A stretch of DNA of 64,000 nucleotides from Haliotis rubra (Eukaryota), in contig NW_025767038.1 in NCBI RefSeq assembly GCF_003918875.1, positions 372,001 to 436,000 on the forward strand, in the 5' to 3' direction. Both the position numbers and the translations under genes were made by a program. Shown here piece by piece: positions 2,399 to 40,537 of the stretch. The notes beneath the pieces were generated by a model. It was not told the DNA's origin. It did no database searches and saw only the letters and a list, made by a program, of their open reading frames with translations. The stretch's first letter is position 1. Each line of letters begins with the position of its first letter.

Positions 2399-2724
2399 TT
2401 CATAACACGTTTCAGGCAAACCTTCTAATTAAACAAAGTGCACAAAGCAAAGAAGACGGTCAGTTGTTTATTGTAATTTGACGACCACGACGAAGAGAGG
2501 AACGAATTCTAAACAAACAGAAGCATGTGTTTGTAAACAGTAGAAATATGCACTGTTGTGCAGAGTATGCGCTGTTTCATACATAACAGCACACTTGAGA
2601 TTTGTCGTGTTTAATGATGTCCATCAGATCAAATCACTCTGAACAACTTGTTTTCTAGGAAGCCAGTCTTCATGAAACCCGAGTCCGCCACGTTTTACAG
2701 CAATATGTCTATTGCATTTGATCA

Positions 2725-3831
2725 CTAGTCACTGCCATTATCACCTCCGTCATCTCCACCGTCATCACCTCCGTCATCACCTCCGTCATCTCCACCGTCA
2801 TCCCCTCCTTCATCTCCAAAGTCATCACCTCCGTCGTCTCCACCGTCATCACCTCCGTCATCGCCACCGTCATCTCCACCGTCATCACCTCCGTCATCAT
2901 CACCTCCGTCATCACCTCCGTCATCACCTGCATCATCATTACCACCGGTTTCTCCGCTTGAATTATTTGCAGGTGGAGAAGCAGGTTGAGGGGCAGTTTG
3001 AGGGGCAGGTTGAGAAGCAGGAGCAGGTGGAGTTGCTGAGAAGATTATATTTAATTAGAAAATATTCCAAAACTACGAAACAAGGGCGAAACAAAGACGT
3101 ATGGAACACAGCTATATACAAAACTCATTATTGAGAAGGAAACACTATGGCTTTAAAATCCATAGATAAGACCATCAAATATAACGTCTCCAAAATATGA
3201 CATGATGATAACGGCAATCGGACGTTAATAAAGAAACATACACATTCATCATACCATCAGAATAGTATCACACTAAAAGGAAACCTTTTGTTTAGTGTAA
3301 TCAAACATATCTTCAAGGTTATATATACTACACATCCCTTGTGGGTATATTCATCCCTTTTGGATTGCAGTATTTTCTTATTGTCATCGCAGTGAAATGA
3401 AAACAGGGTCATTCTCCAAAGTAAGGTCAGAAATAAACAATAGAACTGTCATTCCGGGTTAATATGGACTTCTGAAATGATGGCTGCGCATCAACTGTTA
3501 CATCATCAGAAAGATACAATTTGAAGACACGTTTCATGACACCTTTAAACCATTTAATGTGACAGCTGTACTGTGCAGTTTCCAAAGAGTGTTTAAGTAG
3601 TATTGTGTGTATAAATGAAAAAGACAAGATCGTGCATATCTGGGAATCTGATACATCTGATAGTCGTAGAGACATCGACCGACGGATCATACACCTTCAA
3701 TTTACACACAAACGCTTTTATTCAGAGATGTAAACTATTCATTTGAACTCACTATCCTGGGCGTCACCCATTTGCCACAAGCAGGCAAATGCAAGCACAA
3801 CCGCCATGATCATAATTGTCTTGGTCCTCAT
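2725..3831 (-). CDS. Secreted Asp/Gly-rich (DDGG)n acidic protein, copy A, 129 aa
   Basis: Coding exons 3831-3753 (MRTKTIMIMAVVLAFACLWQMGDAQD, donor GTGAGT, phase 1) and 3035-2725 (acceptor ttctcag, stop TAG). Spliced product: MRTKTIMIMAVVLAFACLWQMGDAQDTTPPAPASQPAPQTAPQPASPPANNSSGETGGNDDAG(DDGG)2DDDGG(DDGG)5DDFGDEGG(DDGG)5DNGSD. Hydrophobic signal peptide, 34 Asp in the last 70 residues, AATAAA at 2472-2467. Confidence 0.9.
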
Positions 3832-4269
3832 AGTGACTGTTCCTCAGGCGTTTCTGAAATATATGGAACAAAACATATGTTTAAGCAAATGCCTGTCTGT
3901 CCTGGACTCATGCGCACCAGATAATCAGTTCGACTTACAATATCCATAATTATTTTTCGCATTAGTCCATACAGATAATGGTACTCTCTGATGGACGAAA
4001 ATACTAAAATCATGGGAGACCTGTCAAAAGGTAAGCGCAATAATGAAATATCAAACTAAATTAACAGGTAATGTACAGAGCCAAAAATGCAAGGTTTTTG
4101 AAATAACCAAGATAACTCTTCTGGTCTATTTGATATTGACACAAGGAAATAATATCAACAGATCTTCTAAGCAGCAGGCAGTAATATATATTGGGCTGTA
4201 AAGGTTGGTTTAATGAGCAGGTCATTAAAGAGGTCGGGCGTGAATTTATATATTTGCATTTTTTTGCAG

Positions 4270-5160
4270 CCATGTCACTAATTTAATGTAAAACCACCTC
4301 TATTGTTCACGAATGCCAGAATTCGTCGAGAGAAGCTTCTGATGAGAGTACCAATTTCAACTTGAGTCATGTTGTGCTACTGATCAGAGAGAACTGCATC
4401 AGGTTCACTGAGATGCCAATGACATGACAGCCGTGCTATATACTGGACTGGTCAGGGATGAATGTTGTCCATGACATGGCTGTGTTGCTGTTGGAGGCAT
4501 TAGAATACAAGCCGGGCATGACGAGTACGTGTATTGTCATCAAGAAAATGAAACGTTCAACAAAACGAAATGCAAATGACGCCAGGATTGCATCAATGAT
4601 CCATAGACAAAGTGGCAGGTCACACAGTCAGTATGACCCTCACCATGACACTACAAACCCACCATCAAACCGGTTTTGTTATATGACAACAACGTCCGTG
4701 AAACGTTCATTAGGACTTATCGAAACGCTTTTCTCGGGCCCTTGGTCATAAAAGTCGAGAATGAACTTCGATCCGTCAGGAAACATGACATAACCCCAAC
4801 ACCGATTATCCCAACGATGACGCCATAGGATGACACATGGAGGACGAGTACTCAGAGTATCTTCCGCAAGTAACAGATCTCATATCTGAGTGGTAGTTTG
4901 CAACAAAACCGATTTCGTAATGTCATCGTCCTCTGCCCGGGTGAAGATTTATGCCAAAGAGCGGTTGCTCATCAGCTGTATTTGACAAACTGCTGATAAT
5001 AGTCTGAGGAACTTTCAACGTTTGAGTAACAACGTTCTCATATGTGCGAGCCATGTCTTTGTCATGTAAACGTTGCAAACGACGCATGATCAGTACTGTT
5101 ACAATGCATTTAACAAAGAACCTTTGAGCGTTTTCTTCCAAGATAGCAATATACGTCTGG
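4270..5160 (-). mobile_element. Highly degenerate Tc1/mariner transposase relic inside intron 1 of the DDGG gene (second copy ~10450-11340)
   Basis: Broken translations WGYVMFPDGSKFIL, ERFTD..NRFDGGFVVSW and LIRSFSRRILAFVNNRGG match Tc1 motifs FSDESKF, RFGGGSVMVW and the C-terminal SMxRR...RGG. Confidence 0.7.
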
Positions 5161-5324
5161 TGACAATCTGATGTCCAAGAGTAATTCTGGCACACCACCT
5201 CTTGCACGTAGAGTCTGAGGTCACTCACCCACTCACTCACGTCCTCATAGCAAAGCGGTTTTGAATGAAACACAAACAAACATCAGAAGAATCTAAATAA
5301 TGAAACAAGCTAAGTTATACTTAC

Positions 5325-5394
5325 GATAGAGAAAACTGTCGCAGTTTATCAACTCTTGGAAGTGTAATGTTTCAATATTCCACACGTATATATA
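5325..5394 (-). promoter_or_regulatory. TATA box and short non-coding first exon of DDGG gene copy A
   Basis: GGTATATATA on the minus strand (TATA 5394-5387), then a ~40 nt exon ending in a perfect GTAAGT donor (5324-5319). A matching tttcag acceptor lies just upstream of the ATG exon. Confidence 0.7.
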
Positions 5395-6439
5395 CCTGTT
5401 TCTTTGACATGTGTAAATTTGAATAAGGTGGTCTTAATGGAGGTGACCTCTGACGAATCATACGTGTTTACACGTGTACTTTGTGTCGTAACAATGTCAA
5501 CATGTTAATATTAGTCGTGATTTTTTTGCACGAACGTGGCAACATCTGTGATCATACTTGATGACATTGTTGACACCAGGAATGTACTATTTTTGGAAAG
5601 AGGAATATTTTGTAAAAGATATCTGTTGTTTTAGGCACCGAAGATCTGTATGAATGAGTCAAACTTTAATCTGCTTTAAGAAATGTACCTGGATTGGATA
5701 ACCTATGGAAAAAGATAAGTTTCTGAATATTGATAATATTTCTATACTAAAACATATTTTACAGGATATGTACGCATGCCTGAATTTAATAACTTTTACA
5801 CTCGTAACGTGCCCAACTATACATTCCATATTATTCGGAATATGTTTTGGTGTTTAAATCTTACTGCCAGTCTAAGCGTTTCTTTACGAAAACATAATAT
5901 GTTTATTTTGAAAATGGCATATTTTCTTCCTTAAACAATCTCCTATTAGAAATGGTCAAAACTGCTTGAGCTTTATGAAAAGGTAAAGAGACCTGTCCAT
6001 CGGTTCTTGTTACAAGTGAACGAGTCAACTGGGTAACCTAAACTACTTGTTCATCTGGAATACACAATGTAGAGGCAGGATATCAGCGAGATGTGATCAC
6101 AAGGTCTGCTCAATTACATACGAGGTTTTCATGTGAATGGAATTTAGAATTTGGACCTTCGACTAACATATATTTGAAAATTAATGATATGTTGTTTACA
6201 CAAAGTACACAAAGTACCGATTTTAAAGATTTTGATGTTAAATATTCTATTATTTACACAGGCCTTTGAAAACAAATAGTATAATTTGTTGTTGGTCACA
6301 TGTCAGCACGTATTCCGACGTTCCCCAGTTTCTCCCTTTTCAAATATAATTGTTTTCATTGGTCAAAACTGACAATTGCTTGGCAACGTGTAGTTTATGA
6401 ATTAGAGCCACAGGTCAATTTGGGAGCCATGGGTTAAAA

Positions 6440-6920
6440 GGTCATGTCCAATAATAGGAACGTGTTGGAGACCGTGGACTTGATGTAAATTCCACTACTT
6501 GTGGCTGCGAAGACTCACATACCTGTTACCAAACTGTATGCCATGTAATGAAAGGTGACATCTGTATCATTGACAATAACACTCTTCGTAAGTTATACCA
6601 AGACAAGTGCGTCTTTTATGGACCAAAGTTTCGTGAGCAACCTCCCAACAATTGGGATTAAAACTTTAAGATAATTATGGATAGTACCAAAGCTTTACCA
6701 ACAATAACCTAAAGTGGAAAAGACACCTGCTAACTGACTTCCACTGTCGGTTGAGTGTTTGATGCTGCCATTAGTAGAATGAACAAAATGAAAGGGTGAA
6801 AACGGAATTGGAATAAACCTGTTTTGTTCCTGTCATCCAAGGTCTGTCGGCCCTACATGGAAAAAATTGTAGTTGTTCCCACTTAAAACGTCCTTTAATT
6901 GTTTCATCAAAGAGCAAAGA
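6440..6920 (+). mobile_element. Penelope-like element ORF fragment (second copy ~12620-13100)
   Basis: CGCEDS..CHVMKGDICIIDNNTLRKL..GPKFREQPPNNWD*NFKIIMD..KIVVVP resembles the PLE GHVITGDL.II.N..LR....GPKYRE...NW motif; contains stops. Confidence 0.7.
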
Positions 6921-8928
6921 GCAATATTTCAGATATTGCCACATACAAGGCCAGGTATTAAGTGAGTAGGGTTAGTTCCGTTTCAAATTCAGTTTACCCT
7001 GCTTGAATCGTGTTTACAGTACTCAGGTATACCTGGATACAGGTCACGTGAACATTTCAATTTGTGCCCATTATAGTCTGACAAAGTGCTATATATAATC
7101 AGCAAGTGCATATTGAAATTTTACAATATTTTAAAATAAAATGAGCACTTTATTAAAATATTGCTGTTCGAAGGTCGTGTTATGTGCAGAGAGCATTTAA
7201 ATAGAAGCGACAAAACCCTCCCACATCCCTAAGAAATCTCTACTTAAAGCAGAGTCGATTGCAAAATTGTGACTATATCATGAGTATAAATTTGTTTCCG
7301 CAGTATTACAGCCGTACTACGATGTTGTTTGTAAACAAATCGAGTCTGAACCAGTGACTATCACCATGCGATACGATGAAGTGCATTGGACATCATTTGT
7401 GTCACTGATGCATCAAATTTGGACTTTTTTCTCCACATGTCTCTGTTCCTTTATATATTTTCAGAATTTCACTCACAGTGCAATATATACCTTGTGAAGA
7501 AACCTGGAAAAAAATAAAAGGAACACGTGTACTTACATGTGTTCCCTTATTAGTTTCCATGAGTATTTATATTTGGGTCTATAATGGATAGAGCTCATAG
7601 AAACTACAAGATGACGTTGCTAAGAGGGACGGGCCACGCCAATATGTCACCTAAGATTCAGCGTTTGTCCCAAAGCTGGACATCATAATTATACGGTTAC
7701 TTGGGCTAAAGGAGTCGTTTTCGGGGCGGGTACCGCATACATGTACCCTGTACAGAGAAACGTAACCTACCAAAATCGGAATACAGAAACTTATCCAGGG
7801 ACGAGACCGAACTGTCATACTATTGTGTAAGATGCATTGGATTGTGTTATAAACTTAAACAAAACACACAGTGACAAAATATTGCGTGATGCACAGTGTC
7901 ACTTGTAATGATGCGAACGGAAGCTAAATAAACGCGAAACACTTTCGATCCCATTTAAAAAATGATCAAATATAACAAAATTACATGATAAATTTTGGAT
8001 TACACTATCTCAGTACAATGTAGACTTGTCTTCCGTTTAGGGTACCGGGCACGTTGTGCATGCTGTCTTTGTTCAGCGTACACTTCGGCGTACAAAAACG
8101 TACCTTGGGTACATATCTGTAGTACCCGTATCAACAACGACCCCTTCGGTGTTACTTGCTTGTTTGCGTTTCTCTGCTTCCCAGTTCGTGCCTCACCAGA
8201 CACCATTATTTAATAAGATTTCAAACAGCTGGTGTCACTGATGGAATATTGTTCAAAGCGGTGTATATCCACACTCATTCACTCTTTCATGTAAACCAGG
8301 GTCCTGATCCACAAAGCAGCGTTCGAAATCAACGTCGGTCCATTGGACCGAAGGCGACAGAAAACCACTCGGAGCCACAGCTTTTGTTTTCTGCATCCCC
8401 AATAACTAAGAGTCTTATTTCCATATTAAAATATAGGGCCTGCACATTCTGATCAGGAAGCACAACTTTTTATGGTTCTGGGTCCTTAGTGCCTGCAGCT
8501 TTTCAGTGTTAAGGGCAAACACTGCCACAAAGAATTCGTAACGATAAGCCTAAATTCAGTAGTTTATCATAGGCTTACAAATGTCGTAGCGCTATAAACG
8601 ATTCATAACACGTTTCAGGTAAACCTTCTAATTAAACAAAGTGCACAAAACAAAGAAGACGGTCAGTTGTTTATTGTAATTTGACGACCACGACGAAGAG
8701 AGGAACGAATTCTAAACAAACAGAAGCATGTGTTTGTAAACAGTAGAAATATGCACTGTTGTGCAGAGTATGCGCTGTTTCATACATAACAGCACACTTG
8801 AGATTTGTCGTGTTTAATGATGTCCATCAGATCAAATCACTCTGAACAACTTGTTTTCTAGGGAAGCCAGTCTTCATGAAACCCGAGTCCGCCACGTTTT
8901 ACAGCAATATGTCTATTGCATTTGATCA

Positions 8929-10012
8929 CTAGTCACTGCCATTATCACCTCCGTCATCTCCACCGTCATCACCTCCGTCATCACCTCCGTCATCTCCACC
9001 GTCATCCCCTCCTTCATCTCCAAAGTCATCACCTCCGTCGTCTCCACCGTCATCACCTCCGTCATCGCCACCGTCATCTCCACCGTCATCACCTCCGTCA
9101 TCACCTCCGTCATCACCTGCATCATCATTACCACCGGTTTCTCCGCTTGAATTATTTGCAGGTGGAGAAGCAGGTTGAGGGGCAGTTTGAGGGGCAGGTT
9201 GAGAAGCAGGAGCAGGTGGAGTTGCTGAGAAGATTATATTTAATTAGAAAATATTCCAAAACTACGAAACAAGGGCGAAACAAAGACGTATGGAACACAG
9301 CTATATACAAAACTCATTATTGAGAAGGAAACACTATGGCTTTAAAATCCATAGATAAGACCATCAAATATAACGTCTCCAAAATATGACATGATGATAA
9401 CGGCAATCGGACGTTAATAAAGAAACATACACATTCATCATACCATCAGAATAGTATCACACTAAAAGGAAACCTTTTGTTTAGTGTAATCAAACATATC
9501 TTCAAGGTTATATATACTACACATCCCTTTGTGGGTATATTCATCCCTTTTGATTGCAGTATTTTTTATTGTCATCGCAGTGAAATGAAAACAGGGTCAT
9601 TCTCCAAAGTAAGGTCAGAAATAAACAATAGAACTGTCATTCCGGGTTAATATGGACTTCTGAAATGATGGCTGCGCATCAACTGTTACATCATCAGAAA
9701 GATACAATTTGACGATTCATGACACCTTTAAATCATTTAATGTGACAGCTGTACTGTGCATTCCAAAGAGTGTTTAAGTAGTATTGTGTGTATAAATGAA
9801 AAAGACAAGATCGTGCATATCTGGGAATCTGATACATCTGATAGTCGTAGAGACATCGACCGACGGATCATACACCTTCAATTTACACACAAACGCTTTT
9901 ATTCAGAGATGTAAACTATTCATTTGAACTCACTATCCTGGGCGTCACCCATTTGCCACAAGCAGGCAAATGCAAGCACAACCGCCATGATCATAATTGT
10001 CTTGGTCCTCAT
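8929..10012 (-). CDS. Secreted Asp/Gly-rich (DDGG)n acidic protein, copy B, 124 aa
   Basis: Exons 10012-9934 and 9224-8929. Same protein as copy A except for an in-frame 15-nt deletion (DDDGG) in the repeat. Confidence 0.9.
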
Positions 10013-11499
10013 AGTGACTGTTCTTCAGGCGTTTCTGAAATATATGGAACAAAACATGTTTAAGCAAATGCCTGTCTGTCCTGGACTCATGCGCACCAGA
10101 TAATCAGTTCGACTTAAAATATCCATAATTATTTTTGGCATTAGTCCATACAGATAATGGTACTCTCTGATGGACGAAAATACTAAAATCATGGGAGACC
10201 TGTCAAAAGGTAAGCGCAATAATGAAATATCAAACTAAATTAACAGGTAATGTACAGAGCCAAAAATGCAAGGTTATTGAAATTACCAAGATAACTCTTC
10301 TGGTCTATGTGATATTGACACAAGGAAATAATATCAACAGATCTTCTAAGCAGCAGGCAAAAATATATATTGGGCTGTGATGGTTGGTTTAATGAGCAGG
10401 TCATTAAAGAGGTCGGGTGTGAATTTATTAATTTGCATCTTTTTGCAACCATGTCACTAATTTCATGTAGAACCACCTCTATTGTTCACAAATGCTAGAA
10501 TTCGTCGAGACATGCTTCTGATGAGAGTACCAATTTCAACTTGACTCATGTTGTTCTACTGATCAGAGAGAACTGCATCAGGTTCACTGAGATGCCAATG
10601 ACATCACAGCCTTGCTATATACTGGACTGGTCAGGGATGAATGTTGTCCATGACATGGCTGTGTTGCTGTTGGAGGCATTAGAATACAAGCTGGGCATGA
10701 CGAGTACGTGCATTGTCATCAAGAAAATGAAACGTTCAACAAAACGAAATGCAAATGACACCAGGACTGCGCCTAAGATCCATAGACAAAGTGGCAGGTC
10801 ACACATTCAGTGTGACCCTCACCATGAGACTACAAACCCACCATCAAACCGGTTTTGTTATATGACAACAACGTCCGTGAAACGTTCATTAGGACTTATC
10901 GAAACGCTTTTCTCGGGCCCTTGGTCATAGAAGTCGAGAATGAACTTCGATCCGTCAGGAAACATGACATAACCCCAACACCGATTATCCCAACGATGAC
11001 GCCATAGGATGACACATGGAGGACGAGTACTCAGAGTATCTTCCGCAAGTAACAGATCTCATATCTGAGTGGTAGTTTGCAACAAAACCGATTTCGTAAT
11101 GTCATCGTCCTCTGCCCGGGTGAAGATTTATGCCAAAGAGCGGTTGCTCATCAGCTGTATTTGACAAACTGCTGATAATAGTCTGAGGAACTTTCAACGT
11201 TTGAGTAACAACGTTCTCATATGTGCGAACCATGTCTTTGTCATGTAAACGTTGCAAACGACGCATGATCAGTACCGTTACAATGCATTTAACAAAGTAC
11301 CTTTGAGCGTTTTCTTCCAAGATAGCAATATCTGGTGACAATCTGATGTCCAAGAGTAATTCTGGCACACCACCTCTTGCACGTAGAGTCTGAGGTCACT
11401 CACCCACTCACTCACGTCCTCATAGCAAAGCGGTTTTGAATGAAACACAAACAAACATCAGAAGAATCTAAATAATGAAACAAGCTAAGTTATACTTAC

Positions 11500-11569
11500 G
11501 ATAGAGAAAACTGTCGCAGTTTATCAACTCTTGGAAGTGTAATGTTTCAATATTCCACACGTATATATA
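11500..11569 (-). promoter_or_regulatory. TATA box and non-coding first exon of DDGG gene copy B
   Basis: TATATATA at 11569-11562 and GTAAGT donor at 11499-11494, same as copy A. Confidence 0.7.
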
Positions 11570-14500
11570 CCTGTTTCTTTGACATGTGTAAATTTGAATA
11601 AGGTGGTCTTAATGGAGGTGACCTCTGACGAATCATACGTGTTTACACGTGTACTTTGTGTCGTAACAATGTCAACATGTTAATATTAGTCGTGATTTTT
11701 TTGCACGAACGTGGCAACATCTGTGATCATACTTGATGACATTGTTGACACCAGGGAATGTACTATTTTTTGGAAAGAGGAATATTTTGTAAAAGATATC
11801 TGTTGTTTTAGGCACCGAAGATCTGTATGAATGAGTCAAACTTTAATCTGCTTTAAGAAATGTACCTGGATTGGATAACCTATGGAAAAAGATAAGTTTC
11901 TGAATATTGATAATATTTCTATACTAAAACATATTTTACAGGATATGTACGCATGCCTGAATGTAATAATTTTTACATTCGTAACATGCCAAACTATACA
12001 TTCCATATTAATCAGAATATTTTTGGTGTGTTTAAATCTTACTGCTAGTCTAAGCGTTTCTTTACGAAAACATAATATGTTTATTTTGAAAATGGCATAT
12101 TTTCTTCCTTAAACAATCTCCTATTAGAAATGGTCAAAACTGCTTGAGCTTTATGAAAAGGTAAAGAGACCTGTCCATCGGTTCTTGTTACAAGTGAACG
12201 AGTCAACTGGGTAACCTAAACTACTTGTTCATCTGGAATACACAATGTAGAGGCAGGATATCAGCGAGATGTGATCACAAGGTCTGCTCAATTACATACG
12301 AGGTTTTCATGTGAATGGAATTTAGAATTTGGACCTTCGACTAACATATATTTGAAAATTAATGATATGTTGTTTACACAAAGTACACAAAGTACCGATT
12401 TTAAAGATTTTGATGTTAAATATTCTATTATTTACACAGGCCTTTGAAAACAAATAGTATAATTTGTTGTTGGTCACATGTCAGCACGTATTCCGACGTT
12501 CCCCAGTTTCTCCCTTTTCAAATATAATTGTTTTCATTGGTCAAAACTGACAATTGCTTGGCAACGTGTAGTTTATGAATTAGAGCCACAGGTCAATTTG
12601 GGAGCCATGGGTTAAAAGGTCATGTCCAATAATAGGAACGTGTTGGAGACCGTGGACTTGGTAGTTCATGATGTAAATTCCACTACTTGTGGCTGCGAAG
12701 ACTCACATACCTGTTACCAAACTGTATGCCATGTAATGAAAGGTGACATCTGTATCATTGACAATAACACTCTTCGTAAGTTATACCAAGACAAGTGCGT
12801 CTTTTATGGACCAAAGTTTCGTGAGCAACCTCCCAACAATTGGGATTAAAACTTTAAGATGATTATGGATAGTACCAAAGCTTTACCAACAATAACCTAA
12901 AAGGAAAAAGACACCTTCTAACTGTCTTCCACTGTCGGTTGAGTGTTTGATGCTGCCATTAGTAGAATGAACACAATGAAAGGTTGAAAACGGAATTGGA
13001 ATAAACCTGTTTTGTTCCTGTCATCCAAGGTCTGTCAGCCCTACATGGAAAAAATTGTAGTTGTTCTCACTTAAAACGTCCTAAAAATTGTTTCATCAAA
13101 GAGCAAAGAGCAATATGTCAGATACTACAACATACAAGGCCAGGTATTAAGTGAGTAGGGTTAGTTCCGTTTCAAATTCACACCCTGCTTGAATCGTGTT
13201 TACAGTACTCAGGTATACCTGGATACAGGTCACGTGAACATTTCAATTTGTGCCCATTATAGTCTGACAAAGTGCTATATATAATCAGCAAGTGCATATT
13301 GAAATTTTACAATATTTTAAAATAAAATGAGCACTTTATTAAAATATTGCTGTTCGAAGGTCGTGTTATGTGCAGAGAGCATTTAAATAGAAGCGACAAA
13401 ACCCTCCCACATCCCTAAGAAATCTCTACTTAAAGCAGAGTCGATTGCAAAATTGTGACTATATCATGAGTATAAATTTGTTTCCGCAGTATTACAGCCG
13501 TACGATGTTGTTTGTAAACAAATCGAGTCTGAACCAGATAATCCAGTGACTATCACCATGCGCTACGATGAACTGCATTGGACACTGATGCATCAAATTT
13601 GGACTTTTCCTCCACATGTCTCTCATATAACTTGAAATAGTGATGACACCAGGTCTTCCCGAAGAGGTGAGCGTTTCCAACCCCACTGGTGGCACCCGTC
13701 ATAAACATATGCCAGTTCTCGTCAATTGTTCACCTGCAAGTCAAAATAGGGAATTGCATGGGACTTTATGTTTATGACTGATGCATCAAATTTGGACATT
13801 TACTTCTCATGCCTGCCATAACACTTATTGACAGATTTACTGAGGCCTTGAATGATGTATCCTTGATCGAACAAGGGTGGCATGACGTTCTTTGAAATCT
13901 TGATAAAAAGAGCACGCTCGATTGCACCCCAAAAGTTGGTGCTGTTGAAATATTGCTCGACTATTGGAAAGTTGAAATCAACCCTTTTGCCATACAGCCT
14001 TGTGGTGGGTTATTTGTCTCTCTGAATCTTTATGCAAAACCAACTAGATGTGAAAAGAGGGCCCCAAAAAATACCGAGTTTTTTGTTGTTGTAATGAACA
14101 TTAATTTAAAAGAACTGATATTAAATATCTATCTAACCATCACTCATCCTTGCAACAGGTTGTAAACATACTTTCGTTTATTGATGACTACTGTAAAAAT
14201 ATATTTTGTAACCATATGCCCATTCCATCTTTGTAATCCGTTATGTTTGTGCCTAAAAGAATATTGATTCTGAAGGATAAGATGTCAATCCGCCGCCATA
14301 TATAGCTGGGATATTGCTGAGTGCGGCGTAAAATTAAACTCACCCACTCACTCGATAAGATGTCAATGATACCTATCAGCACTTGTGTATCGCTTTGAAA
14401 TTCTCAGTTGAAATTACACCGAGAACATTAAGTGCTTATCAAGCGTGACAGTGAACTACTGAAACCAGTGGAATTCCTGTTGCGTAGATATGTGAATGTG

Positions 14501-16615: not shown

Positions 16616-16632
16616 TATGTGTGCATGTGCAC

Positions 16633-24820: not shown

Positions 24821-25627
24821 TCATATGTCTTGCAACCAATCAAAGCAATAAGGAGTGAATTCCGTGGTGGTAGTAACGGCGGGATCAATAACAGGCTCTG
24901 TCGTCTCATGTTCTACTACGTCGTCGTGGCTCTGAAGAGTTCCTGCAAAATATATGGCACATCTCTGATCATGTTATCCCGTCCGATAGGTGAGGTGATT
25001 TAAATGGGTTTAACGTCGTGCTTGAGAATATTTCGCTCATAGGATGACGTGCATGCATGTGTATGTGCGGCTGCTTGTACTAGCCCAGACTGAAGCTGGT
25101 TTTATAGTGCTAGCCCGCTGGGATACCATGCCGCAGTGAAGCATGAATACCCCACTCAGACACATTATACTGACTCCGAGCCGACCAGTCCTTGTTGTAC
25201 CCATTAATGCCGAGCGCCAGGCAGGGACCAACAAGTACCATATTTTAACGTCTTTTGGTATGACGCGGTCGGGGATCGAACCCGCGACCTTCCGCTCTCT
25301 GGGCGGACGCTCTAACCACTACACCACAGAGGTGGTCCTGTCCGAGAGCATCACAGTGATTCAGAAAGTGGCTGACGTTGGTCAAACTAAACCACGTCCC
25401 GGGTTAGCGGGTCAGAACCTCAACACTGAGAGACTAATGCAAAATCACCCTGTACTCATTCAAAACACCGTAGAGGCACGAGTAACTCTATTTATACTCA
25501 ATCATTGTTTGATTATCGACTGCAATGTTTTGTAAGAATTAAACAAAATATACCGACCTGCCCGCACATGGTAAAAGCATGCTGACTGCACGCGCAGAAC
25601 CGCAAGCAAAAGGACACGACCGTGCAT
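24821..25627 (-). CDS. Small secreted acidic His/Glu/Thr-rich peptide, paralog 1, 63 aa
   Basis: Exons 25627-25558 (phase 1, donor GTCGGT) and 24942-24821 (acceptor ttttgcag): MHGRVLLLAVLRVQSACFYHVRAGTLQSHDDVVEHETTEPVIDPAVTTTTEFTPYCFDWLQDI*. AATAAA at 24459-24454 is conserved with the paralog. Confidence 0.78.
24990..25335 (-). mobile_element. tRNA-derived SINE with Meta/MESC-like central domain (family C)
   Basis: tRNA-like head, core cataccaaaagacgttaaaa..ggtacttg..ggcgctcggcattaa..cagtataatgtg; imperfect 13-bp TSD at 24977-24989 and 25336-25348. Confidence 0.85.
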
Positions 25628-26285
25628 TGTTATTCTGTGATTTCTTCCTGAAAGTGTACCAAACAGTTTCCGGTATCATGTGCATTCAACATGGTATATT
25701 AAAAACATAATCGGTGACAACAAATTAAAAATACATTACATGGTTGACAGAAGGCAATCTTTCTAAAACAAATAACAAGTCAGTCGGTTATGTTTCCGTA
25801 TGACAGTGAGTGAGTGAGTCACATCGGCAACATCTAAGCCATATCGTGACGAGCCGTATGACAGTACAGATGGAGTTTCCTTTACGTATTATCAGAAGGA
25901 AGAGAGATTCATATTAACTACATCACCTTCGCGATCGTGCAGAATACGGAATAGCTGTCCAGGGTAAATAAATTTGCCAGATGTGTCCAGAAATAATTAC
26001 TTTTAAAAGATGCTGCGTTTCATAAACGATATACATATGTTCAATGTAAGGAATAACTTCATAAAAAAATAATTGTTATATAAAAAGTGCTATTTCTATA
26101 GATATAACACGAAATTATGTTCCATATGAGGAAACTCGAAGTCAACTGAACCATCGAAAGAATGGATTTATGCGCAGTTCAAACCGAACGCAGTAAGTCA
26201 ATCACTTGTTGGCAAAAATCATGACTACATGTTTCGAATTATAGTTCGATTTAACCAAATTTCGCTATTTTAAACGTTTACTTAC

Positions 26286-26355
26286 CGATGTAAAAAGCTG
26301 AAAGTCATTTCTTCCTGTTTCACTGCAAGTGACGTTAATATAAGCCATATATATA
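26286..26355 (-). promoter_or_regulatory. TATA box and non-coding exon 1 of paralog 1
   Basis: GGTATATATA (TATA 26355-26348) and GTAAGT donor at 26285-26280; both conserved in the paralog at 31.2 kb. Confidence 0.7.
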
Positions 26356-27258
26356 CCCAAATGTACCATCAACGACAATTACGATACAGACCACGCACTT
26401 TTTATAAAAAAAATAGGTCTATCTTTTATTTATTTATTGGCACAGCAAGTAGCATGTCAGACGTAATGTGCACGGGAATTGTCATTGTTAAAGGTATTTT
26501 AATTGTCGGATATATTCATTCAACAGCAATTCTGCATTTAAGTTGACATTGATAGTACTATTGAAAGTACAATGAAGGAAGGTATGAATGCCATTTATAT
26601 GTACAACGCTGTATAAACATCGATATATCCGAACGGAAACTAGCTTTACATGCGATAACCTGCCTCACTCAAGTGCTTCCTTATTATTACACCCAAGACA
26701 TAAATGAATCTAATTAAAGCTGAACTGACACGTAAGACACGTATGTGTACCCATCCTTGGGTACGCATTTCGAAGATCACTTAGCGAATGGCAAATGTCT
26801 TTGTTTGCATTGATGGATTGTCTTTATTTTTATGTAAACGAATACTAGTATATATATAAACGGCATGTAAGCTTCTTAAGCGTTTTCAGAGCTCAAATAG
26901 GAATAGAGAATAAGACCTGAATACTTGGTGATAGCTACATCTCACTTGAAAGACATTGATAGTAGATCCGATCTGTGGTAGTCATGAAAACCCGTTAACA
27001 AGTTTCGTCCATGTAATATTTCTGGTTCATACAATGTGTGTGAAACTAATGAATAGTCTTCCGCCTGTTTAAGGTGATAAATTGAACCGACATTTATAAA
27101 TCGGGTGTTGTTGCATCTTGTTACAGAACCATGCAGAGACATGTATGTTGTCTTAACCATCTCTTGTTTCATTATGTATATTGTATAACGACTACGCATG
27201 TATATTATTGTATCCTAAGGTTGCATTATTGCCGTCATAGTACACGGCCCAGATTCGT

Positions 27259-28455: not shown

Positions 28456-29973
28456 CATAAGATGCTGATGCTTACTTACTCAACACTTGACTCGCCTTTG
28501 AGTGAATTTGGGTGTCGCCAGTAAGAAAGAATGTTTACGCTCATTATTCGTCTTAAACACATAGTATCATCACAATCGGGTAATAATCATATAAACACTA
28601 GGTGACCCAGTCCACCCAGCTGTGAATGGGTACCTCGTTAGGATGAGAAAGCCACAATAACTCGGTGCGCCTGGTGGCTGCAAGAGTTGTATACTCCCCA
28701 GGGAGTTGAGAGTGATAATACGATGTGCTGTTGAGATTGACATCCAATGATCGAGGGAAAAAATACCAGCGCCTTGAGCATGCACTAGTTACGTGGATAT
28801 GTGCTCTATATAAATATCCTATAATAATGGTGATGGTATAGTATGTACCGTTAGTGTTGTGTGTTTGGTTTTTGTTTCACCCCAGCGATCAATGTTCAAA
28901 CTATATGATGGCGGTTTGTAAATATTCGTGTCTGGATCACATAATCCAGAGACATCATGTGTATTGTTCTAGGCATTATGGACAGGATGGATGATTTGAA
29001 ATAGGTCTGTAACTGCTATCTGCAGTGAACTAGTTCAACGTGGTTTATGTGTGTTATCAGGGCCGAATGAGTTGAAATTTGATTAGGAATGGCATCAAGA
29101 GTGTATAAGTTGAACCTGTCTCAGAAACGTTATCCGATGTGTATAATTGCGTTTCACAAACAAAATAAAGTTAGAGGTAGTGAAGTTTACCTCTTTGGTG
29201 GAACCTACAAAGAGAATGTGGTTGGGTTGGGTAGGATTCACAACTATGCAGAGTGAAAATATCCCACTGTGCTTCCCCTGTTTGTTACCTGAATTACTGA
29301 TTTGACATAACCATCTATGTAAATTTGTTTTATGATTTTTAAGAAAGAAAACAGACAAAGAGGAAGGGATGCAGTATTTGCATTGTTGGCAAAAGAGTCT
29401 CGGCATATTTAATGAACAAATTGTGAGTCCCTACTTATCGGTAAAAGAACATTATAGATCTAAGTGTTTAATCTTGACCCCAACAAAAATCGACTCAAAT
29501 AATGTTTTGCAAATTACAAGAGATCCACCATTCGATACCTTGACGAACTAGATCACAACAAGGGACACTAGGCCAGAATAATTGAAGCCATATATTTATT
29601 TTGCATCACATTTAGAAATATTAATAATTAGTGTTTCAAATGTAATGCACAAACGTCAAAATGGTAGCGAGTTTTACTTTCTTATATATTGTAGAAGATA
29701 CATTTTGTTACATTTGTATAAATAAGATGTGAAGGTGATACTTTTACAATAGTCATCCAGGGTTGCCCATTTAACTGTACATTCAAACTATTATCTGAAA
29801 GTGCTTTATTTTGTAGTTCGCCTTTTGTTCTGCCAAATGAGTTCACTGTAATGCGATATCAATCATCGCGTGATATGGCTGTATCCCAGCATATGTATTG
29901 AACTATCCTTTGAAAGTGGTTGTAAAATGTCAATAGGTCATAATAACATCAATTGGTTCAAACAGATCGGTAA

Positions 29974-30518
29974 TTATTGAATCAGATCAGGATCAGGAAC
30001 GTGTTCCGTGGTGGTAGTGAGGAGATCAGTAACAGGCTCTGTAGTCGTAGTCTCATGTTCTTCAACGTGGTCGTGGCTTGGTAGAGTTCCTGCAACATAT
30101 ATAACCCATCTCTGGTCAAGTCATCCTGTCATTTGGCATCACAGTGATTCAGAAACTGGCTGACGTTGGTCAAACTAAAACAAGTGTTAGTGGTTCAGTA
30201 CCTCAACACTGAGTGGCGACTATTCACCATGTATTCATACAAAACATCATGTACGCATGAGTCACACAACTCATGCTCGACCCGTTACACATATCCCAAA
30301 AGGTCACACCTTGTAGCAAACACATATTTCTGGAAATACACCGATATTGTCAAGTAGCTGAGTTTCAACTCAAAACGCAACACAGCTTTACAAAGTGTTT
30401 GATTATCGACTGCAATGTATTTGTATACATTAAGAAAATTATACCGACCTGCCACCAACTGGTAAAAGCATGCTGACTGCACGAGTAGAACCATGAGCAA
30501 AAGGCAGCGGCCGTGCAT
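29974..30518 (-). CDS. Small secreted acidic His/Glu/Thr-rich peptide, paralog 2, 61 aa
   Basis: Exons 30518-30449 and 30089-29974: MHGRCLLLMVLLVQSACFYQLVAGTLPSHDHVEEHETTTTEPVTDLLTTTTEHVPDPDLIQ*. Splice sites and frame are conserved with paralog 1; AATAAA at 29600-29595. Confidence 0.85.
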
Positions 30519-31189
30519 TGTTATTCTGTGGAATCTTTCTGAAATTGTCCAAAATAGTTTCCAGTGACATGTGCTTTCAAAATTAAAAACGCAATCGGTG
30601 ACAACAAGAAATTAAAAACACATTACATGGTGGACAGGAGTCAATCCTTCAAGACAGAAGCGACAATTTCCTTTCAATCCATAAGAAATCTCTGCTCAAA
30701 GCAGAGTCGATTGTACTGTTGTGAGCATATCATGAGTATATATAATACAAAGTCAGTCGGTTTATGATAGTACGGGTGGAGTTTCCTTAAGGTATTATCA
30801 GAAGAAAGAGAGCTTCATAATTATTAACGTCAACTTCTACATACGGAATATCTGTCAAGTTTAAATATATTTGCAAGATGTATTCAGAAATAATTACTTT
30901 TAAAGGATGCAGCGTTTTATGAAAGATGGTACACATGTTGCATGTTGAGAATAACTTCATAAATATATTTAGTATAAAAATGTGATATTTTTGTAGATAT
31001 AACATAAAAGTAAGCTCCATATGAGTAAAGCAGTTAACTCGAAGTCAACTAAACCATCGACAAAATTGATTTATGCGTAGTTCTAATCGAACGTTGCTAG
31101 TCGATCGCTCGTTGGCAAAGATCATAACTGGTGTTTCGAGTTATAGTTCGAGATCACAGAAGTTCGCTATATTGTAAATGTTTACTTAC

Positions 31190-31264
31190 TGATATATAGG
31201 CGCTGGAAGTTACTTCTTTCTGTTTCACGACCAGTGAGATTAATAAAAGCCGCACATATATATA
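31190..31264 (-). promoter_or_regulatory. TATA box and non-coding exon 1 of paralog 2
   Basis: GGTATATATA (TATA 31264-31257) and GTAAGT donor at 31189-31184. Confidence 0.7.
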
Positions 31265-31736
31265 CCTAAATGTTCCCACAACGACAATTACGATACGGAC
31301 CACGCACCTTTTAACAGGTTAGGTCTATCTTTTATTTATTTCTTTGCACTAGCAAGTAGGAGGTTAGGCGTAATGCGCACCAGAATTGTCATTGTTAAGT
31401 GTATTTTAATAGTCTGTTATATCCAGTCAACAGCAATTGTACATCTAAGTTTTATTGATAGTGAAACGTAGGGAGCCATCATTAACATTTGTATGTTCGT
31501 TATCGTATGTACAATGTGTATAAAAATCGATGCATCGCCTTCGAAATGAAAAGCTGTAGCCATACATGGGATGGGCTGGCTCACTCAAGACGTGGACCCT
31601 AATTATGACACCCAATACATAAATGAATCTGATTAAAATTGAACAGATACACTCGTGTGTTTTCCCATTCTTGGGTGCGTATTTCCAAGATCACTTGACG
31701 ATGTTTTGTGTTCGGACTGATGGATAGTGTTTATTT

Positions 31737-31879
31737 NNNNNNNNNNNNNNNNNNNNNNNNNNNNNNNNNNNNNNNNNNNNNNNNNNNNNNNNNNNNNNNN
31801 NNNNNNNNNNNNNNNNNNNNNNNNNNNNNNNNNNNNNNNNNNNNNNNNNNNNNNNNNNNNNNNNNNNNNNNNNNNNNNN
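31737..31879. other. Assembly gap
   Basis: Run of N. Confidence 1.
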
Positions 31880-37369: not shown

Positions 37370-37563
37370 ATGTGGCGACGATCTGTACGTAATCGAGTCT
37401 GTACCAGTCAATCTAGTGATCAACAACATGAATATTGATCTACGCAACTGGGATACGATGACATGTGTCAACCAGTTCAGCGAACCTGACCACCCGATGC
37501 CGTTACTTGCCTCTTACAACAAGCTTAGGTTGCTGGAGATCAGTTCTAACCCGTATCTTCACG
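37370..37563 (-). mobile_element. SINE family B (diverged)
   Basis: Similar to 27259-27512. Confidence 0.8.
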
Positions 37564-37725
37564 TTTAACACAGATGTAAGAAACACGTAACCAGGTTCTT
37601 CCTGCTTGGTATACATGAACTTTATTGATAATGTAGAGAAAGGAAGCAGCATGGCGCATCATAAGAAACAACTATTTCCAGTAGACGGTGACAAATGTTG
37701 CTGCCGCAGTCGCGGAATGTTGCGT

Positions 37726-39645
37726 TTACTTCATCTCCAGTTCATACATTTCTTCAGAGAGGTCGGGGTCACCTAGATGTGTCTTTGTTGGGAACGTTGT
37801 ATCGTCGGTGACATCATCATCTTTAAATGAAAATGACAATGAACTAATATCAGAGAAGACAGCTGTTGACATACTGGTTATGAATATGATTAGTACCAAT
37901 ATACTAAAAAATAATAAAACTATATAATGCGTTCATATATATTACTAAGACTTTCGACAGTGTCTGGAAACTTGGCTTAGTGAAAGTTAGTGAAATATTG
38001 CTTACAGGAACATTGTAGAGATTGAAACAACATACGACCTACGTAGCTAGTCAAGGTTAACATTTATCTCCTTTGCTATTTTCAACAGTTACGATGTAAA
38101 TTACCTATAACATTTTACTTTTTTTATACATGGCTGCAAAGGGTTGGATATTAAAAGTTTGGACGATGGGAACATATTTACATGTGGTGCACTCCATTCT
38201 TGCTGATACTATATGCTAATGGCGTTGTCTCATTACGAGAAGACCTTGCATCTCCTGAAGCTACTTTCTAAGTTTTATGTGTTATTGAAGTGCAAAATAT
38301 TGCAAAAAAAACCCCAAACACCCAAACTCTCTGACATTGTAATGTAAGACATTACAAAAGTCGACGTATTTTTATCTTAGGCGACGAAGACATTTATGTA
38401 AAACATCATTGCGCCTAATTATGTTCCGTCAAAAGAAACAACATTTCAAAACGATAAAAACTTCAATTTGTCGAAAACCATTAAAAGCTAATTTATGTCT
38501 ACTAACGAATCCACAAAATACTACCTATAGTCAACCTCTCGATTCTCGTTTAATATCTGTAGCATGAGGGTGCACGTATATGTTATAGATCAGAGGTATG
38601 GGGTTTTGTAAACATTGATCAGCAGCGCTTGCCTTCTGTAAAACGACAGATCAAGATTCGCTAGGCGTTCTCCTGATCCGACCGTTTATTGGGTGTCCGC
38701 AGATCTCAACACAGAGTAGCATTGTGCTTGTGTGTTGTTTGACTCCACACTAAGCATTATTACAGCTAAGGGACGACGGTTGTAAACACACCAGACCGAA
38801 CCCGGCTATCCATTGGTTCTGGGGAACGTGCAATCTTAACCGAAATCCCCATAGTATCGTTATGCAGGGAGGTACCTTAAGGTGTAAAGCAGATTCTTGG
38901 GAGATTACGACAGATAGCTTCCAACACCAACGACAGAGTCAAGTTCAAGTGTAAGGCGGTCATAATGTGTGGCCAGTCTTATTGCCTGTTATAGTACATC
39001 GACGACTTGGGTTAGAATATGTACCCAACACAATATATATACCCAATTTATGTACCCAATTGCTTGTGGCAGTCGTCCTTTTGACTTCCGAGTGGTTTGT
39101 CTGTGCGTCTTTTAGTGTTGTGTGAACACTATTTTCTTTATCGATGAATCAATTCAGAGGCGTTGAATGAACGAGTGCCAAGATTACAGGTGAATTATTG
39201 ACAAGCAAAGGACAGATTTCATAGCGAATATCAAATTGAGTCATCCGTTAATTGACAATTTCTTTGCGAGTCACAAAAAATGCATGATTTTATTCCCATG
39301 TTTTGGGGGCGGCCTGTAGTTATCAAATCCCAACCAATGATTGATCGTCGTCGACCTGTACCATGACAAAGAATAAGTATCGCGTCAATTATTTTAGCAC
39401 CCGACCATAGCTTTGTTGGGTATTGTAAGGATGATGATTGAACATCTTTGTTGCAATTGTATTTTACCAGATTCAGTAGTGTCTTCAGTTGTGTCTTCAG
39501 TCGTGTCCTCGGTGTCGTCCTCAGTTGTGTCCTCCGTCGTATCCTCGGTGTGGTCCTCAGTTGTGTCCTCAGTAGTGTCCTCCGTTGTTTCAGTGTAGGC
39601 CAGGTGGAGGAACAATCCCAAGAAAAGGAGAAGTCTCAGTTTCAT
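37726..39645 (-). CDS. Secreted (TTED)n Thr/Glu/Asp-rich acidic protein, 90 aa
   Basis: Exons 39645-39468 (MKLRLLLFLGLFLHLAYTETTEDTTEDTTEDHTEDTTEDTTEDDTEDTTEDTTEDTTES, phase 1) and 37820-37726 (DDDVTDDTTFPTKTHLGDPDLSEEMYELEMK*). AATAAA at 37626-37621; acceptor before the ATG at 39668-39667. Confidence 0.88.
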
Positions 39646-40468
39646 GGTGTCTTTTTCGTATTCGTGCTGTAAGGTTAAGTTACAAAGCATGGTAAAGAGA
39701 TCAGGAATATGGCGTGATAATTCTGAAGTGCGATGTGTGCCCGTGTCTTGTATATATATGTGTATGTGTGTGTGTGATTGCATGAAATAATTCCGTTTCT
39801 TTTTGTGTCAGGCCACTGCCATATCATTCTAGAGTTAATCGTCCTCTTATTATGCTAATTCCGAGCCAACGGGTTCGCGTTCTCAACAACGCGGAGAACC
39901 AAGAGAGATACCGACAAGAACCATCATTTATCGCATTTTGGTACTGTCTGGAACGGCATCGAAGCAGCGACATTCTAATCTATTCAATATATCCAAGAGA
40001 CAACTCAGGTGTATGTATTATGTTATGTACAAAATAATTATGTAAAGCTGATGATATCTGCAGATGTAAAATACATTTGATGAATTACAGGACATTCAAT
40101 GCTCGCCATAGAATCAAGCTGATTAATCAGCTACACTTCTTTCCGTAGAGATCAGATTTACAAACTTCGCTTCCTCGTCAGATGTTCAATTTTTGCGTCA
40201 ACTAATCATGTTATTACATTCACATTTATACTAGCTGCTTATGGTGTTTGGCCTGTGGTAACATTATCCACAACTGGCAAATTACATTATTTCTAGTCTC
40301 AAGAGAATTATTTACCATCATCTGAAGTCATTTCCTCATTTTGATCTCCTCTTTCCAAAATGTATTTCTTTATCATTGTTGAGATACAGAACAAGTAACC
40401 ATAGTTTTCCTATTGTTCTAATCCCTCCTTTAGTTTGTAAAACTGTGAGAGACATATGTCATACTTAC

Positions 40469-40537
40469 CGAGGTAGCTGACGCTGTCGACCCTGGTTTGT
40501 CTTTACTGACGGGTCTCCGTGTCCCGGCTTTTAAATA
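40469..40537 (-). promoter_or_regulatory. TATA-like box, initiator and non-coding exon 1 of the TTED gene
   Basis: TATTTAAAA at 40537-40529, TCAGT Inr at 40509-40505 at canonical spacing, GTAAGT donor at 40468-40463. Confidence 0.72.

What the first reader, a model, noticed from the sequence alone, without database searches (positions are those of the whole stretch)
2467..40537. Cryptic tandem cluster of small secreted polyanionic proteins with one shared gene architecture (candidate biomineralization or matrix locus)
Seen in sequence: five co-oriented minus-strand genes, none correctly called by the ORF track. Each has a TATA box, a ~40 nt non-coding exon with a GTAAGT donor, an exon carrying the signal peptide, a phase-1 intron, a terminal exon and AATAAA. 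Four share GGTATATATA. The mature regions differ completely in repeat type, (DDGG)n, HDxVxEHE-T-rich and (TTED)n, but all are strongly acidic, nearly free of basic residues and predicted disordered. Established: Asp-rich disordered secreted proteins such as Aspein, Asprich and MSP-1 modulate CaCO3 deposition in bivalve shells. Inference: this is one lineage-specific family that keeps a promoter and signal cassette while swapping acidic repeats. A shell role is a hypothesis; mucus, adhesive, radula or statolith roles are equally possible.
Basis: partly seen in the sequence, partly recalled or inferred. Interest (0 to 1): 0.9.

Follow-up and report, generated by a model that had tools for sequence, protein, structure and literature searches.

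The report
Unannotated abalone secreted polyanion gene cluster
A 38-kb stretch of an apparent abalone genome holds five small unannotated three-exon genes for secreted, very acidic, disordered proteins; one is clearly conserved in a related species, but their tissue and role, shell-building included, remain untested.

Summary
Five minus-strand genes in three lineages each show a TATA box, a short non-coding exon with a GTAAGT donor, a signal-peptide exon closed by a phase-1 intron, a terminal exon and AATAAA. The lineages are A/B (DDGG)n, C/D (38-40-residue Thr/acid peptides) and E (TTED)n. Mature chains have no Lys or Arg (E has two Lys) and net charges of -9 to -37.

- **Gene E** is confirmed as coding. 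A genomic contig from a related species keeps its signal peptide, repeats, splice phase, in-frame terminal exon and poly(A) signal, with pN 0.09 against pS 0.57.
- **A/B** are supported by synonymous-only variation among repeat units.
- **C/D** are weakly constrained (dN/dS about 0.74).

The assembly gap lies 471 bp upstream of D's TATA and touches no exon.

"One family" rests only on shared architecture. The spacings match within a few bases, but there is no sequence similarity beyond the TATA core. No relatives of A/B or C/D turned up in billions of proteins, so no characterised family matches.

The shell role is untested. Trypsin-only shell proteomics could not have detected A-D. Abalone FITZAP shows that small secreted polyanions can instead package cationic proteins.

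Verdict: new members of a known kind, moderately interesting.

The parts
2467..5396 (-). Gene A: TATA 5396-5387; non-coding exon 1 ending 5325; exon 2 3853-3753 (ATG 3831, signal peptide); exon 3 CDS 3035-2725 with a Pro-rich 12-nt repeat followed by (DDGG)n; AATAAA 2472-2467. 129 aa.
8670..11571 (-). Gene B: tandem duplicate of A. TATA 11571; exon 1 ends 11500; exon 2 10034-9934; exon 3 CDS 9224-8929; AATAAA 8675-8670. 124 aa. Exons are identical to A except for one in-frame 15-nt repeat difference.
24454..26357 (-). Gene C: TATA 26357; exon 1 ends 26286 and carries an out-of-frame ATG at 26308; exon 2 25647-25558 (ATG 25627); exon 3 CDS 24942-24821; AATAAA 24459-24454. 63 aa. A SINE-like insert lies in intron 2.
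29595..31266 (-). Gene D: paralogue of C. TATA 31266; exon 1 ends 31190; exon 2 30538-30449 (ATG 30518); exon 3 CDS 30089-29974; AATAAA 29600-29595. 61 aa.
37621..40537 (-). Gene E: TATTTAAAAG 40537-40528; exon 1 ends 40469; exon 2 39666-39468 (ATG 39645, signal peptide plus (TTED)n); 1647-nt intron 2; terminal exon CDS 37820-37726; AATAAA 37626-37621. 90 aa.
39034..39043 (-). Fifth GGTATATATA, inside E's intron 2. It has an extended match to C's promoter (21 of 24 bases). It is absent from the relative, whose intron 2 is only 269 nt.
31737..31879 (.). Assembly gap. It is intergenic, 471 bp upstream of D's TATA, and colinear with copy C on both sides.
1236..13623 (.). Two 6.2-kb tandem units (96.4% identical) carrying A and B. 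Partial unit tails at 1-1235 and 13624-14448 suggest the array may continue past the left edge of the window.

Best explanation
The region carries five unannotated, TATA-driven, three-exon genes in three lineages: A/B, C/D and E. Each encodes a cleavable signal peptide followed by a short, Lys/Arg-free, strongly acidic, disordered chain. So far the genes appear restricted to abalone-type genomes.

Shown:
- The gene anatomy.
- The acidity of the mature chains.
- Purifying selection on E between species.
- Codon-level constraint on the DDGG frame.

Inferred mechanism: the proteins enter the ER and lose the signal peptide. The Thr/Ser/Pro-rich stretches (A's PAPQ spacer, E's TTED repeats, the C/D peptides) become O-glycosylated. 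The flexible Asp/Glu arrays then act outside the cell, or inside secretory granules, as multivalent anions. They would bind Ca2+ or carbonate mineral surfaces, or cationic partner proteins.

My odds for a specific role are:
- CaCO3 shell-matrix component, mainly A/B: about 0.3. This is the single most likely role.
- Mucin- or glue-like secretion: about 0.2.
- FITZAP-like packaging partner: about 0.15-0.2.

The three lineages probably descend from one ancestral gene whose structure survived while its sequence did not (about 0.55).
For: - Canonical signals and phase-1 junctions in all five genes.
- A at position -3 of every ATG (read directly from the sequence).
- Hydrophobic signal cores, 9-residue hydropathy 2.8-3.5.
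- TATA plus GTAAGT pairing: 6 observed against 0.53 expected, on the minus strand only.
- E: contig L001 from a related species keeps the signal peptide (16 of 19 residues), the 21-nt acceptor-to-ATG spacing, the phase-1 donor, a terminal exon in frame whose indels are all multiples of three, and AATAAA. pN/pS is 0.09/0.57 in exon 2 and 0.16/0.76 in the terminal exon.
- A/B: all 13 differences among the 13 GGDD units fall on third codon positions, and both Asp codons and all four Gly codons are used.
- E repeats: 15 of 21 variant bases are at third codon positions.
- Charges and composition.
Against: - There is no transcript evidence. No spliced product of any of the five genes is in a collection of about 15 billion proteins that includes run assemblies.
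- C/D evolve almost neutrally. dN/dS is about 0.74, and exons are about 80% identical against 73-77% for introns and flanks.
- C has an upstream out-of-frame ATG in exon 1.
- The identity of the A/B exons may reflect recent duplication or gene conversion rather than selection; intron 2 is also 99.7% identical.
- Common ancestry rests on architecture only.
- The function is inferred from composition alone.
Confidence: 0.6

Rival explanations
1. Shell-matrix reading. A/B, and perhaps the others, are mantle-secreted polyanions that become occluded in or line the CaCO3 shell and modulate nucleation and growth, like aspein, asprich or MSP-1.
For: - A/B mature chains are 33-35% Asp, with net charge -34 to -37, no basic residues and a signal peptide.
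- Very acidic, disordered, tandem-repeat proteins are among the major greenlip abalone shell proteins (PMC6003135).
- With no Lys or Arg, A-D would escape trypsin-based shell proteomics. That paper itself lists lack of trypsin sites as a reason for missed proteins.
Against: - No sequence relation to any named shell protein.
- None of six diagnostic strings occurs in the stored supplements of the greenlip abalone shell proteome, including the 80 shell-forming proteins and the peptide tables. E's C-terminal tryptic peptide would have been detectable.
- There are no expression data.
- Thr-rich C/D/E look more mucin-like than mineral-binding.
Confidence: 0.3
2. FITZAP-like reading. The proteins are anionic partners that neutralise and densely package highly cationic secreted proteins in granules, then release them in high-salt seawater. 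Abalone FITZAP/sp6 does this for sperm lysin and sp18.
For: - FITZAP is an abalone precedent. It is small (3-4 kDa mature), secreted, disordered and rapidly evolving, with net charge -6 to -16, and its first coding exon ends in phase 1 (PMC6952181).
- C/D mature peptides are 38-40 residues with charge -9.
- C/D evolve fast.
- E's conserved tail carries an acid-flanked Tyr, as red FITZAP-4D does.
Against: - No significant similarity to five FITZAP mature sequences (best p about 0.03 before correcting for 25 comparisons).
- The FITZAP start motif is absent from the window.
- A-D have no furin site, and the exon layout differs.
- No tissue data.
Confidence: 0.17
3. Mucin, glue or lubricant reading. 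The Thr-rich acidic chains (E, C/D and A's spacer) are densely O-glycosylated components of pedal mucus, adhesive or egg coats, and Ca2+ shields their charge during granule packing.
For: - E is 35% Ser+Thr and C/D 22-29%.
- E's exon 2 gives a sub-threshold match to the Drosophila New_glue family (PF21827, E 4.7e-4, 20.3 bits against a cut-off of 31).
- A has a Pro/Thr/Ser spacer and NNSS sequons (read directly from the sequence).
Against: - The Pfam match is below threshold and compositional.
- The proteins are far shorter than typical gel-forming mucins and lack Cys-rich multimerising domains.
- The (DDGG)n block has no glycosylation sites.
Confidence: 0.2
4. Three unrelated small secreted-protein genes sit together by chance or under shared regulation. 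The common architecture is the generic layout of animal secreted-peptide genes, not a sign of common descent.
For: - No sequence similarity between lineages in promoter, exon 1, signal peptide or 3' end apart from the TATA core.
- Phase-1 introns after signal peptides are common (my own knowledge).
- Co-orientation counts only three independent events.
- The shared 550-bp segment upstream of D and E is a mobile-element insertion absent from C.
Against: - Spacings agree within a few bases in all three lineages: TATA to donor 69-77 nt, acceptor to ATG 20-22 nt.
- All three encode Lys/Arg-free polyanions within 38 kb.
- A and D share 16 of 18 bases around the TATA.
- D and E share HxxDPDL.
Confidence: 0.4
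5. C and/or D are decaying or never-translated copies. Their open frames survive only because they are short.
For: - dN/dS is about 0.74, and exons are barely more conserved than introns.
- C has an out-of-frame ATG in exon 1 that D lacks (read directly from the sequence).
- The C-termini differ after residue 32.
- No relatives or transcripts were found.
Against: At about 25% divergence both copies keep the TATA box, the GTAAGTAA donor, both acceptors, the GTCGGTAT donor, the ATG context, the phase, the open frame with in-frame indels, and the AATAAA context.
Confidence: 0.25

Closest known systems
Unusually acidic molluscan shell-matrix proteins (aspein, asprich, MSP-1; repetitive low-complexity mantle secretome proteins)
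   Same: Signal peptide, Asp-rich short tandem repeats, very low pI, disorder, lineage restriction, rapid evolution and tandem duplication.
   Different: No sequence similarity. The Asp content (33-35%) is well below aspein or asprich (up to 75%, PMC6003135). Neither shell occurrence nor mantle expression is known. C/D/E are rich in Thr and Glu rather than Asp.
Abalone FITZAP / sp6 (PMC6952181)
   Same: Same genus-level lineage, if the abalone attribution is right. Small, secreted, disordered, strongly anionic and fast-evolving. The coding exon that carries the signal peptide ends in phase 1. Short Asp runs lie near the mature N-terminus (C: HDD; E's terminal exon: DDD).
   Different: No significant alignment. 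The signal peptide is different. FITZAP has no separate non-coding first exon in the alignment shown, carries a furin site, and has a removed C-terminal exon. It is not encoded in this window.
Vertebrate SCPP gene cluster (enamel, bone, milk and saliva proteins)
   Same: A tandem cluster of secreted, disordered, acidic proteins recognisable by gene structure (non-coding exon 1, signal peptide in exon 2) rather than by sequence. Repeat content is swapped between members.
   Different: SCPP introns are virtually all phase 0 (PMC6732285), whereas these are phase 1. There are no SxE phosphorylation motifs. SCPP is a vertebrate-only lineage. This is an analogy, not membership.
Drosophila new-glue / Sgs salivary glue proteins (Pfam PF21827)
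   Same: Small secreted proteins with a signal peptide followed by Thr-rich short repeats, encoded by clustered genes.
   Different: The match is below the Pfam threshold (20.3 against 31 bits) and is compositional. The phylum is different, and no adhesive role is known here.

Membership tests
Acidic molluscan shell-matrix proteins (aspein/asprich/MSP-1 type) | N-terminal signal peptide | tested here: met
   Hydrophobic cores and small residues at -3/-1 in all five genes. No dedicated predictor was available.
Acidic molluscan shell-matrix proteins (aspein/asprich/MSP-1 type) | Asp-dominated, very acidic mature chain | tested here: met
   A/B: 32-35 Asp in 100-105 residues, net charge -34 to -37. 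C/D/E are acidic but rich in Thr and Glu.
Acidic molluscan shell-matrix proteins (aspein/asprich/MSP-1 type) | Sequence similarity to a named member | tested here: not met
   No credible hit for A's exon 3, the C/D profile or Pfam.
Acidic molluscan shell-matrix proteins (aspein/asprich/MSP-1 type) | Recovered from shell extract | tested here: inconclusive
   The motifs are absent from the greenlip abalone shell proteome supplements. That study used trypsin only, and some files are truncated.
Acidic molluscan shell-matrix proteins (aspein/asprich/MSP-1 type) | Expression in mantle or shell field | not testable with these tools
   No read mapping is available, and no transcript-derived protein was found.
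FITZAP / sp6 | Small, secreted, disordered, net-anionic peptide | tested here: met
   C/D mature peptides are 38-40 aa with charge -9. FITZAP is -6 to -16.
FITZAP / sp6 | Alignable sequence (signal peptide MRV[IV]LI..., poly-Asp followed by an EPxDL-type segment) | tested here: not met
   Shuffle tests were not significant. The start motif is absent from the window even with 3 mismatches.
FITZAP / sp6 | Furin site with the C-terminal exon product removed | tested here: not met
   No Lys or Arg in mature A-D. FITZAP has RRKR before the exon boundary.
FITZAP / sp6 | Acrosomal location and salt-dependent binding to lysin/sp18 | not testable with these tools
   This needs expression and binding assays.
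Vertebrate SCPP cluster (analogy) | Non-coding exon 1 and signal peptide in exon 2, in a tandem cluster | tested here: met
Vertebrate SCPP cluster (analogy) | Phase-0 introns throughout | tested here: not met
   All coding introns here are phase 1. The SCPP rule comes from PMC6732285.
Pfam PF21827 New_glue | Score at or above the gathering threshold | tested here: not met
   20.3 bits against a cut-off of 31, E 4.7e-4, on E's exon 2 only.

The most novel reading that the evidence does not exclude
This is a molluscan counterpart of the vertebrate SCPP cluster. One ancestral three-exon secreted gene kept its skeleton (TATA, a roughly 40-nt non-coding exon, ATG about 21 nt into exon 2, a phase-1 junction) while its mature region was repeatedly replaced by different polyanionic repeats. 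The products act in CaCO3 shell formation, or in FITZ-type electrostatic packaging. They have stayed invisible because ORF callers miss them and trypsin cannot cut them.
Probability: 0.2. Interest if true: 0.7.

Novelty: new member of a known kind. Interest (0 to 1): 0.45.

Why it matters
If these genes are expressed, they add a class of very small, Lys/Arg-free polyanions to the abalone secretome. Both standard annotation and trypsin-based shell or mucus proteomics miss this class systematically.

The (DDGG)n proteins, with net charge about -35, are obvious candidates for mineral or counter-ion functions.

The cluster also offers a test case for how gene structure can outlast sequence in fast-evolving secreted disordered proteins.

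The exact splice junctions given here make the question directly testable with existing abalone RNA-seq.

Tried and rejected
1. **Alternative E model.** I spliced exon 2 to a near acceptor at 39355, and also tried reading through to the stop at 39394. Rejected: the relative places the 37820-type exon 269 nt after exon 2 and conserves it in frame.
2. **Separate sixth gene from the GGTATATATA at 39043.** The only candidate first exons are weak: ATG 38963 with a GTAATC donor, and ATG 38722. The whole segment is absent from the relative. Left as an observation.
3. **Sixth TATA plus GTAAGT pair at 17001.** No signal exon follows it.
4. **Shared 550-bp segment upstream of D and E as a duplication trace.** It is an insertion relative to C, so a mobile element.
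5. **Antisense 140-aa ORF over A's repeat as bait for relatives' genomic contigs.** No hit among 1.84 billion representatives.
6. **Hits P0001, P0002, P0004 and metagenome locus L002.** These match only the low-complexity repeats and were not treated as relatives.
7. **More paralogous exons in the window.** tblastn with all exon peptides found none convincing.
8. **Literature strings.** DDGGDDGG and TTEDTTED appear in no paper. The run accession of L001 appears in no paper.
9. **FITZAP homology.** Not supported.
10. **ESM Atlas look-alikes of A.** Only unnamed low-score clusters.
11. **Organism.** I did not verify it. The blacklip abalone attribution comes from other agents' notes.

Full report
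**Observation**

The window is AT-rich eukaryotic DNA (GC about 0.38) full of SINE-like and Tc1/mariner debris.

| Gene | TATA | Exon 1 ends | Exon 2 (ATG) | Exon 3 CDS | AATAAA | Length |
|---|---|---|---|---|---|---|
| A | 5396 | 5325 | 3853-3753 (3831) | 3035-2725 | 2472 | 129 aa |
| B | 11571 | 11500 | 10034-9934 (10012) | 9224-8929 | 8675 | 124 aa |
| C | 26357 | 26286 | 25647-25558 (25627) | 24942-24821 | 24459 | 63 aa |
| D | 31266 | 31190 | 30538-30449 (30518) | 30089-29974 | 29600 | 61 aa |
| E | 40537 (TATTTAAAAG) | 40469 | 39666-39468 (39645) | 37820-37726 | 37626 | 90 aa |

- All exon-1 donors are GTAAGT.
- All signal exons end in phase 1.
- Every ATG has A at position -3.

None of the coding frames appears correctly in a mechanical ORF list. 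The DDGG frame has no start codon, the C/D exons are too short, and E's exon 2 is buried in a 129-aa ORF with a false start and read-through.

**More than chance**

- GGTATATATA occurs five times, all on the minus strand, against 0.19 expected.
- A TATA-like octamer followed by GTAAGT 50-95 nt later occurs six times on the minus strand and never on the plus strand, against 0.53 expected.
- Collapsing duplicates still leaves four independent cases.

**Duplicates**

- A and B lie in a 6.2-kb tandem unit that is 96.4% identical. Partial unit tails at both ends suggest the array may run past the left edge of the window.
- C and D are older paralogues, 72-77% identical.
- There are therefore three lineages, not five independent genes.

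**The gap**

The N run at 31737-31879 lies 471 bp upstream of D's TATA. Copy C aligns up to D 31736 and resumes at D 31883, with about 52 bp of C opposite the gap. The flanks are colinear, and no exon or frame is involved.

**Products**

With the predicted signal peptide removed:

| Gene | Mature length | Composition | Lys/Arg | Net charge |
|---|---|---|---|---|
| A | 105 aa | 35 Asp, 34 Gly | 0 | -37 |
| B | 100 aa | 32 Asp, 32 Gly | 0 | -34 |
| C | 40 aa | Thr/acid-rich | 0 | -9 |
| D | 38 aa | Thr/acid-rich | 0 | -9 |
| E | 72 aa | 44% Asp+Glu, 35% Ser+Thr | 2 Lys | -30 |

A also has a 12-nt-repeat Pro/Ala/Gln spacer and NNSS sequons.

**Are they coding?**

Gene E has the strongest evidence.
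- A search with E's exon 2 found one relative, a 142-aa ORF on a 1681-bp genomic contig assembled from a public run (L001).
- That contig aligns colinearly with the window at 65-78% identity.
- It has the same acceptor with a 21-nt spacing to the ATG, and a signal peptide identical at 16 of 19 residues.
- It has TTED-type repeats and a phase-1 GT donor.
- Only 269 nt further on lies the homologue of the 37820 exon, in frame, with every indel a multiple of three and a conserved GDPDLS..Y tail. A conserved 3' UTR block and AATAAA follow.
- pN/pS is 0.09/0.57 over 51 codons of exon 2 and 0.16/0.76 in the terminal exon.

Genes A/B:
- All 13 differences among the 13 GGDD units are at third codon positions.
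- Both Asp codons and all four Gly codons are used.
- That pattern is expected if this frame is the one under selection.
- The two copies differ in the coding region only by an in-frame 15-nt block. Recent duplication or gene conversion could also explain their identity.

Genes C/D are weaker:
- Exons are about 80% identical against 73-77% for introns and flanks, and dN/dS is about 0.74.
- C carries an out-of-frame ATG in exon 1.
- Even so, all signals and the open frame survive about 25% divergence.

**Relatives and annotation**

- A's exon 3 found nothing credible.
- An exhaustive search with the antisense ORF found nothing.
- The exact C and D proteins are not in the collection, and a C/D profile found nothing.
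- Pfam gave only a sub-threshold New_glue match on E.
- No characterised family matches, and the genes appear unannotated.
- By the same token, there is no transcript evidence.

**One family?**

Between lineages nothing aligns except the TATA core. A and D share 16 of 18 bases, and the 39043 copy shares 21 of 24 with C. The signal peptides are not similar, and D and E share HxxDPDL at p about 0.02. A 550-bp segment upstream of both D and E is a mobile-element insertion, not a duplication trace.

In favour of common descent are the matching spacings (TATA to donor 69-77 nt, acceptor to ATG 20-22 nt, phase 1) and the shared Lys/Arg-free polyanionic character within 38 kb. I put common descent at about 0.55. 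The literal "promoter and signal cassette" is not supported.

**Function**

Other agents' notes attribute this genome to the blacklip abalone. I did not verify this.

- *Shell role.* The greenlip abalone shell proteome reports very acidic, disordered repeat proteins. None of my diagnostic strings occurs in its supplements. The study used trypsin only, and it says that proteins lacking trypsin sites may be missed. The test is therefore blind for A-D and mildly negative for E.
- *Packaging role.* Abalone FITZAP/sp6 shows a different established use for small secreted polyanions. It packs cationic lysin and sp18 in the acrosome and releases them in seawater. Its sequences are not significantly similar to C, D or E, and it is not encoded in this window. 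It is a functional precedent only.
- *Cluster logic.* The vertebrate SCPP cluster is the best analogy, but its introns are phase 0.

**Verdict**

These are new, unannotated members of a known kind: lineage-restricted secreted acidic disordered proteins. Their role is open. Interest is moderate.

Noticed in passing
window 39034-39056 and 38963-38908 (minus strand): The fifth GGTATATATA sits in E's intron 2 and extends to a 21-of-24 match with C's promoter. Downstream of it, an ATG at 38963 opens an 18-codon weakly hydrophobic ORF that ends at a phase-1 GTAATC donor. Spliced to E's terminal exon it would read HDDV..., as in gene C. This could be an alternative first exon or a relic. The whole segment is missing from the relative, whose intron 2 is 269 nt.
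   Followed up: partly
window 17001-16937 (minus strand), 16613-16736, 17076-17323: A sixth TATA-like box with a GTAAGT donor 64 nt downstream, but no signal-peptide exon follows. It lies between a 17/34/85-nt minisatellite and a (CA)n microsatellite.
   Followed up: partly
window 32040-32591 and 41551-42092: Two copies, about 81% identical, of a roughly 550-bp element about 1 kb upstream of D and of E, in the same orientation. The element is absent from the matching place upstream of C, so it is a mobile-element insertion.
   Followed up: yes
window 24988-25299 and 58503-58822: A SINE-like element with a tRNA-like head (by eye; ARAGORN calls no tRNA). It is 93.75% identical between C's intron 2 and a distant copy. 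A second repeat family of about 230 bp has copies at 15550-15787, 27263-27509, 37368-37566, 41317-41447, 45037-45261 and 45950-46183.
   Followed up: no
window 50406-50852 (+), 28208-28450 (-), 27875-28129 (-), 4458-5279: Tc1/mariner-type transposase remnants (DDE_3 at E 8e-12; HTH_Tnp_Tc3_2 below threshold). Similar debris lies inside intron 1 of A and B.
   Followed up: partly
window 26308-26306 (minus strand): Gene C has an ATG in its non-coding exon 1, out of frame with the main ORF. Gene D has GTA at the same place. It may damp translation of C or mark its decay.
   Followed up: no
window 1-1235 and 13624-14448: Partial tails of the 6.2-kb DDGG unit at both ends of the pair. The array may hold further DDGG gene copies beyond the left edge of the window.
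   Followed up: no
window 60033-60396: A second assembly gap (364 N), outside the finding.
   Followed up: no
window 47249 (minus strand): A signal-peptide-like ORF start (MRWVLVSIALTLMPVVMS...) with an upstream acceptor and a phase-1 donor, flagged by my generic scan. It was not examined.
   Followed up: no
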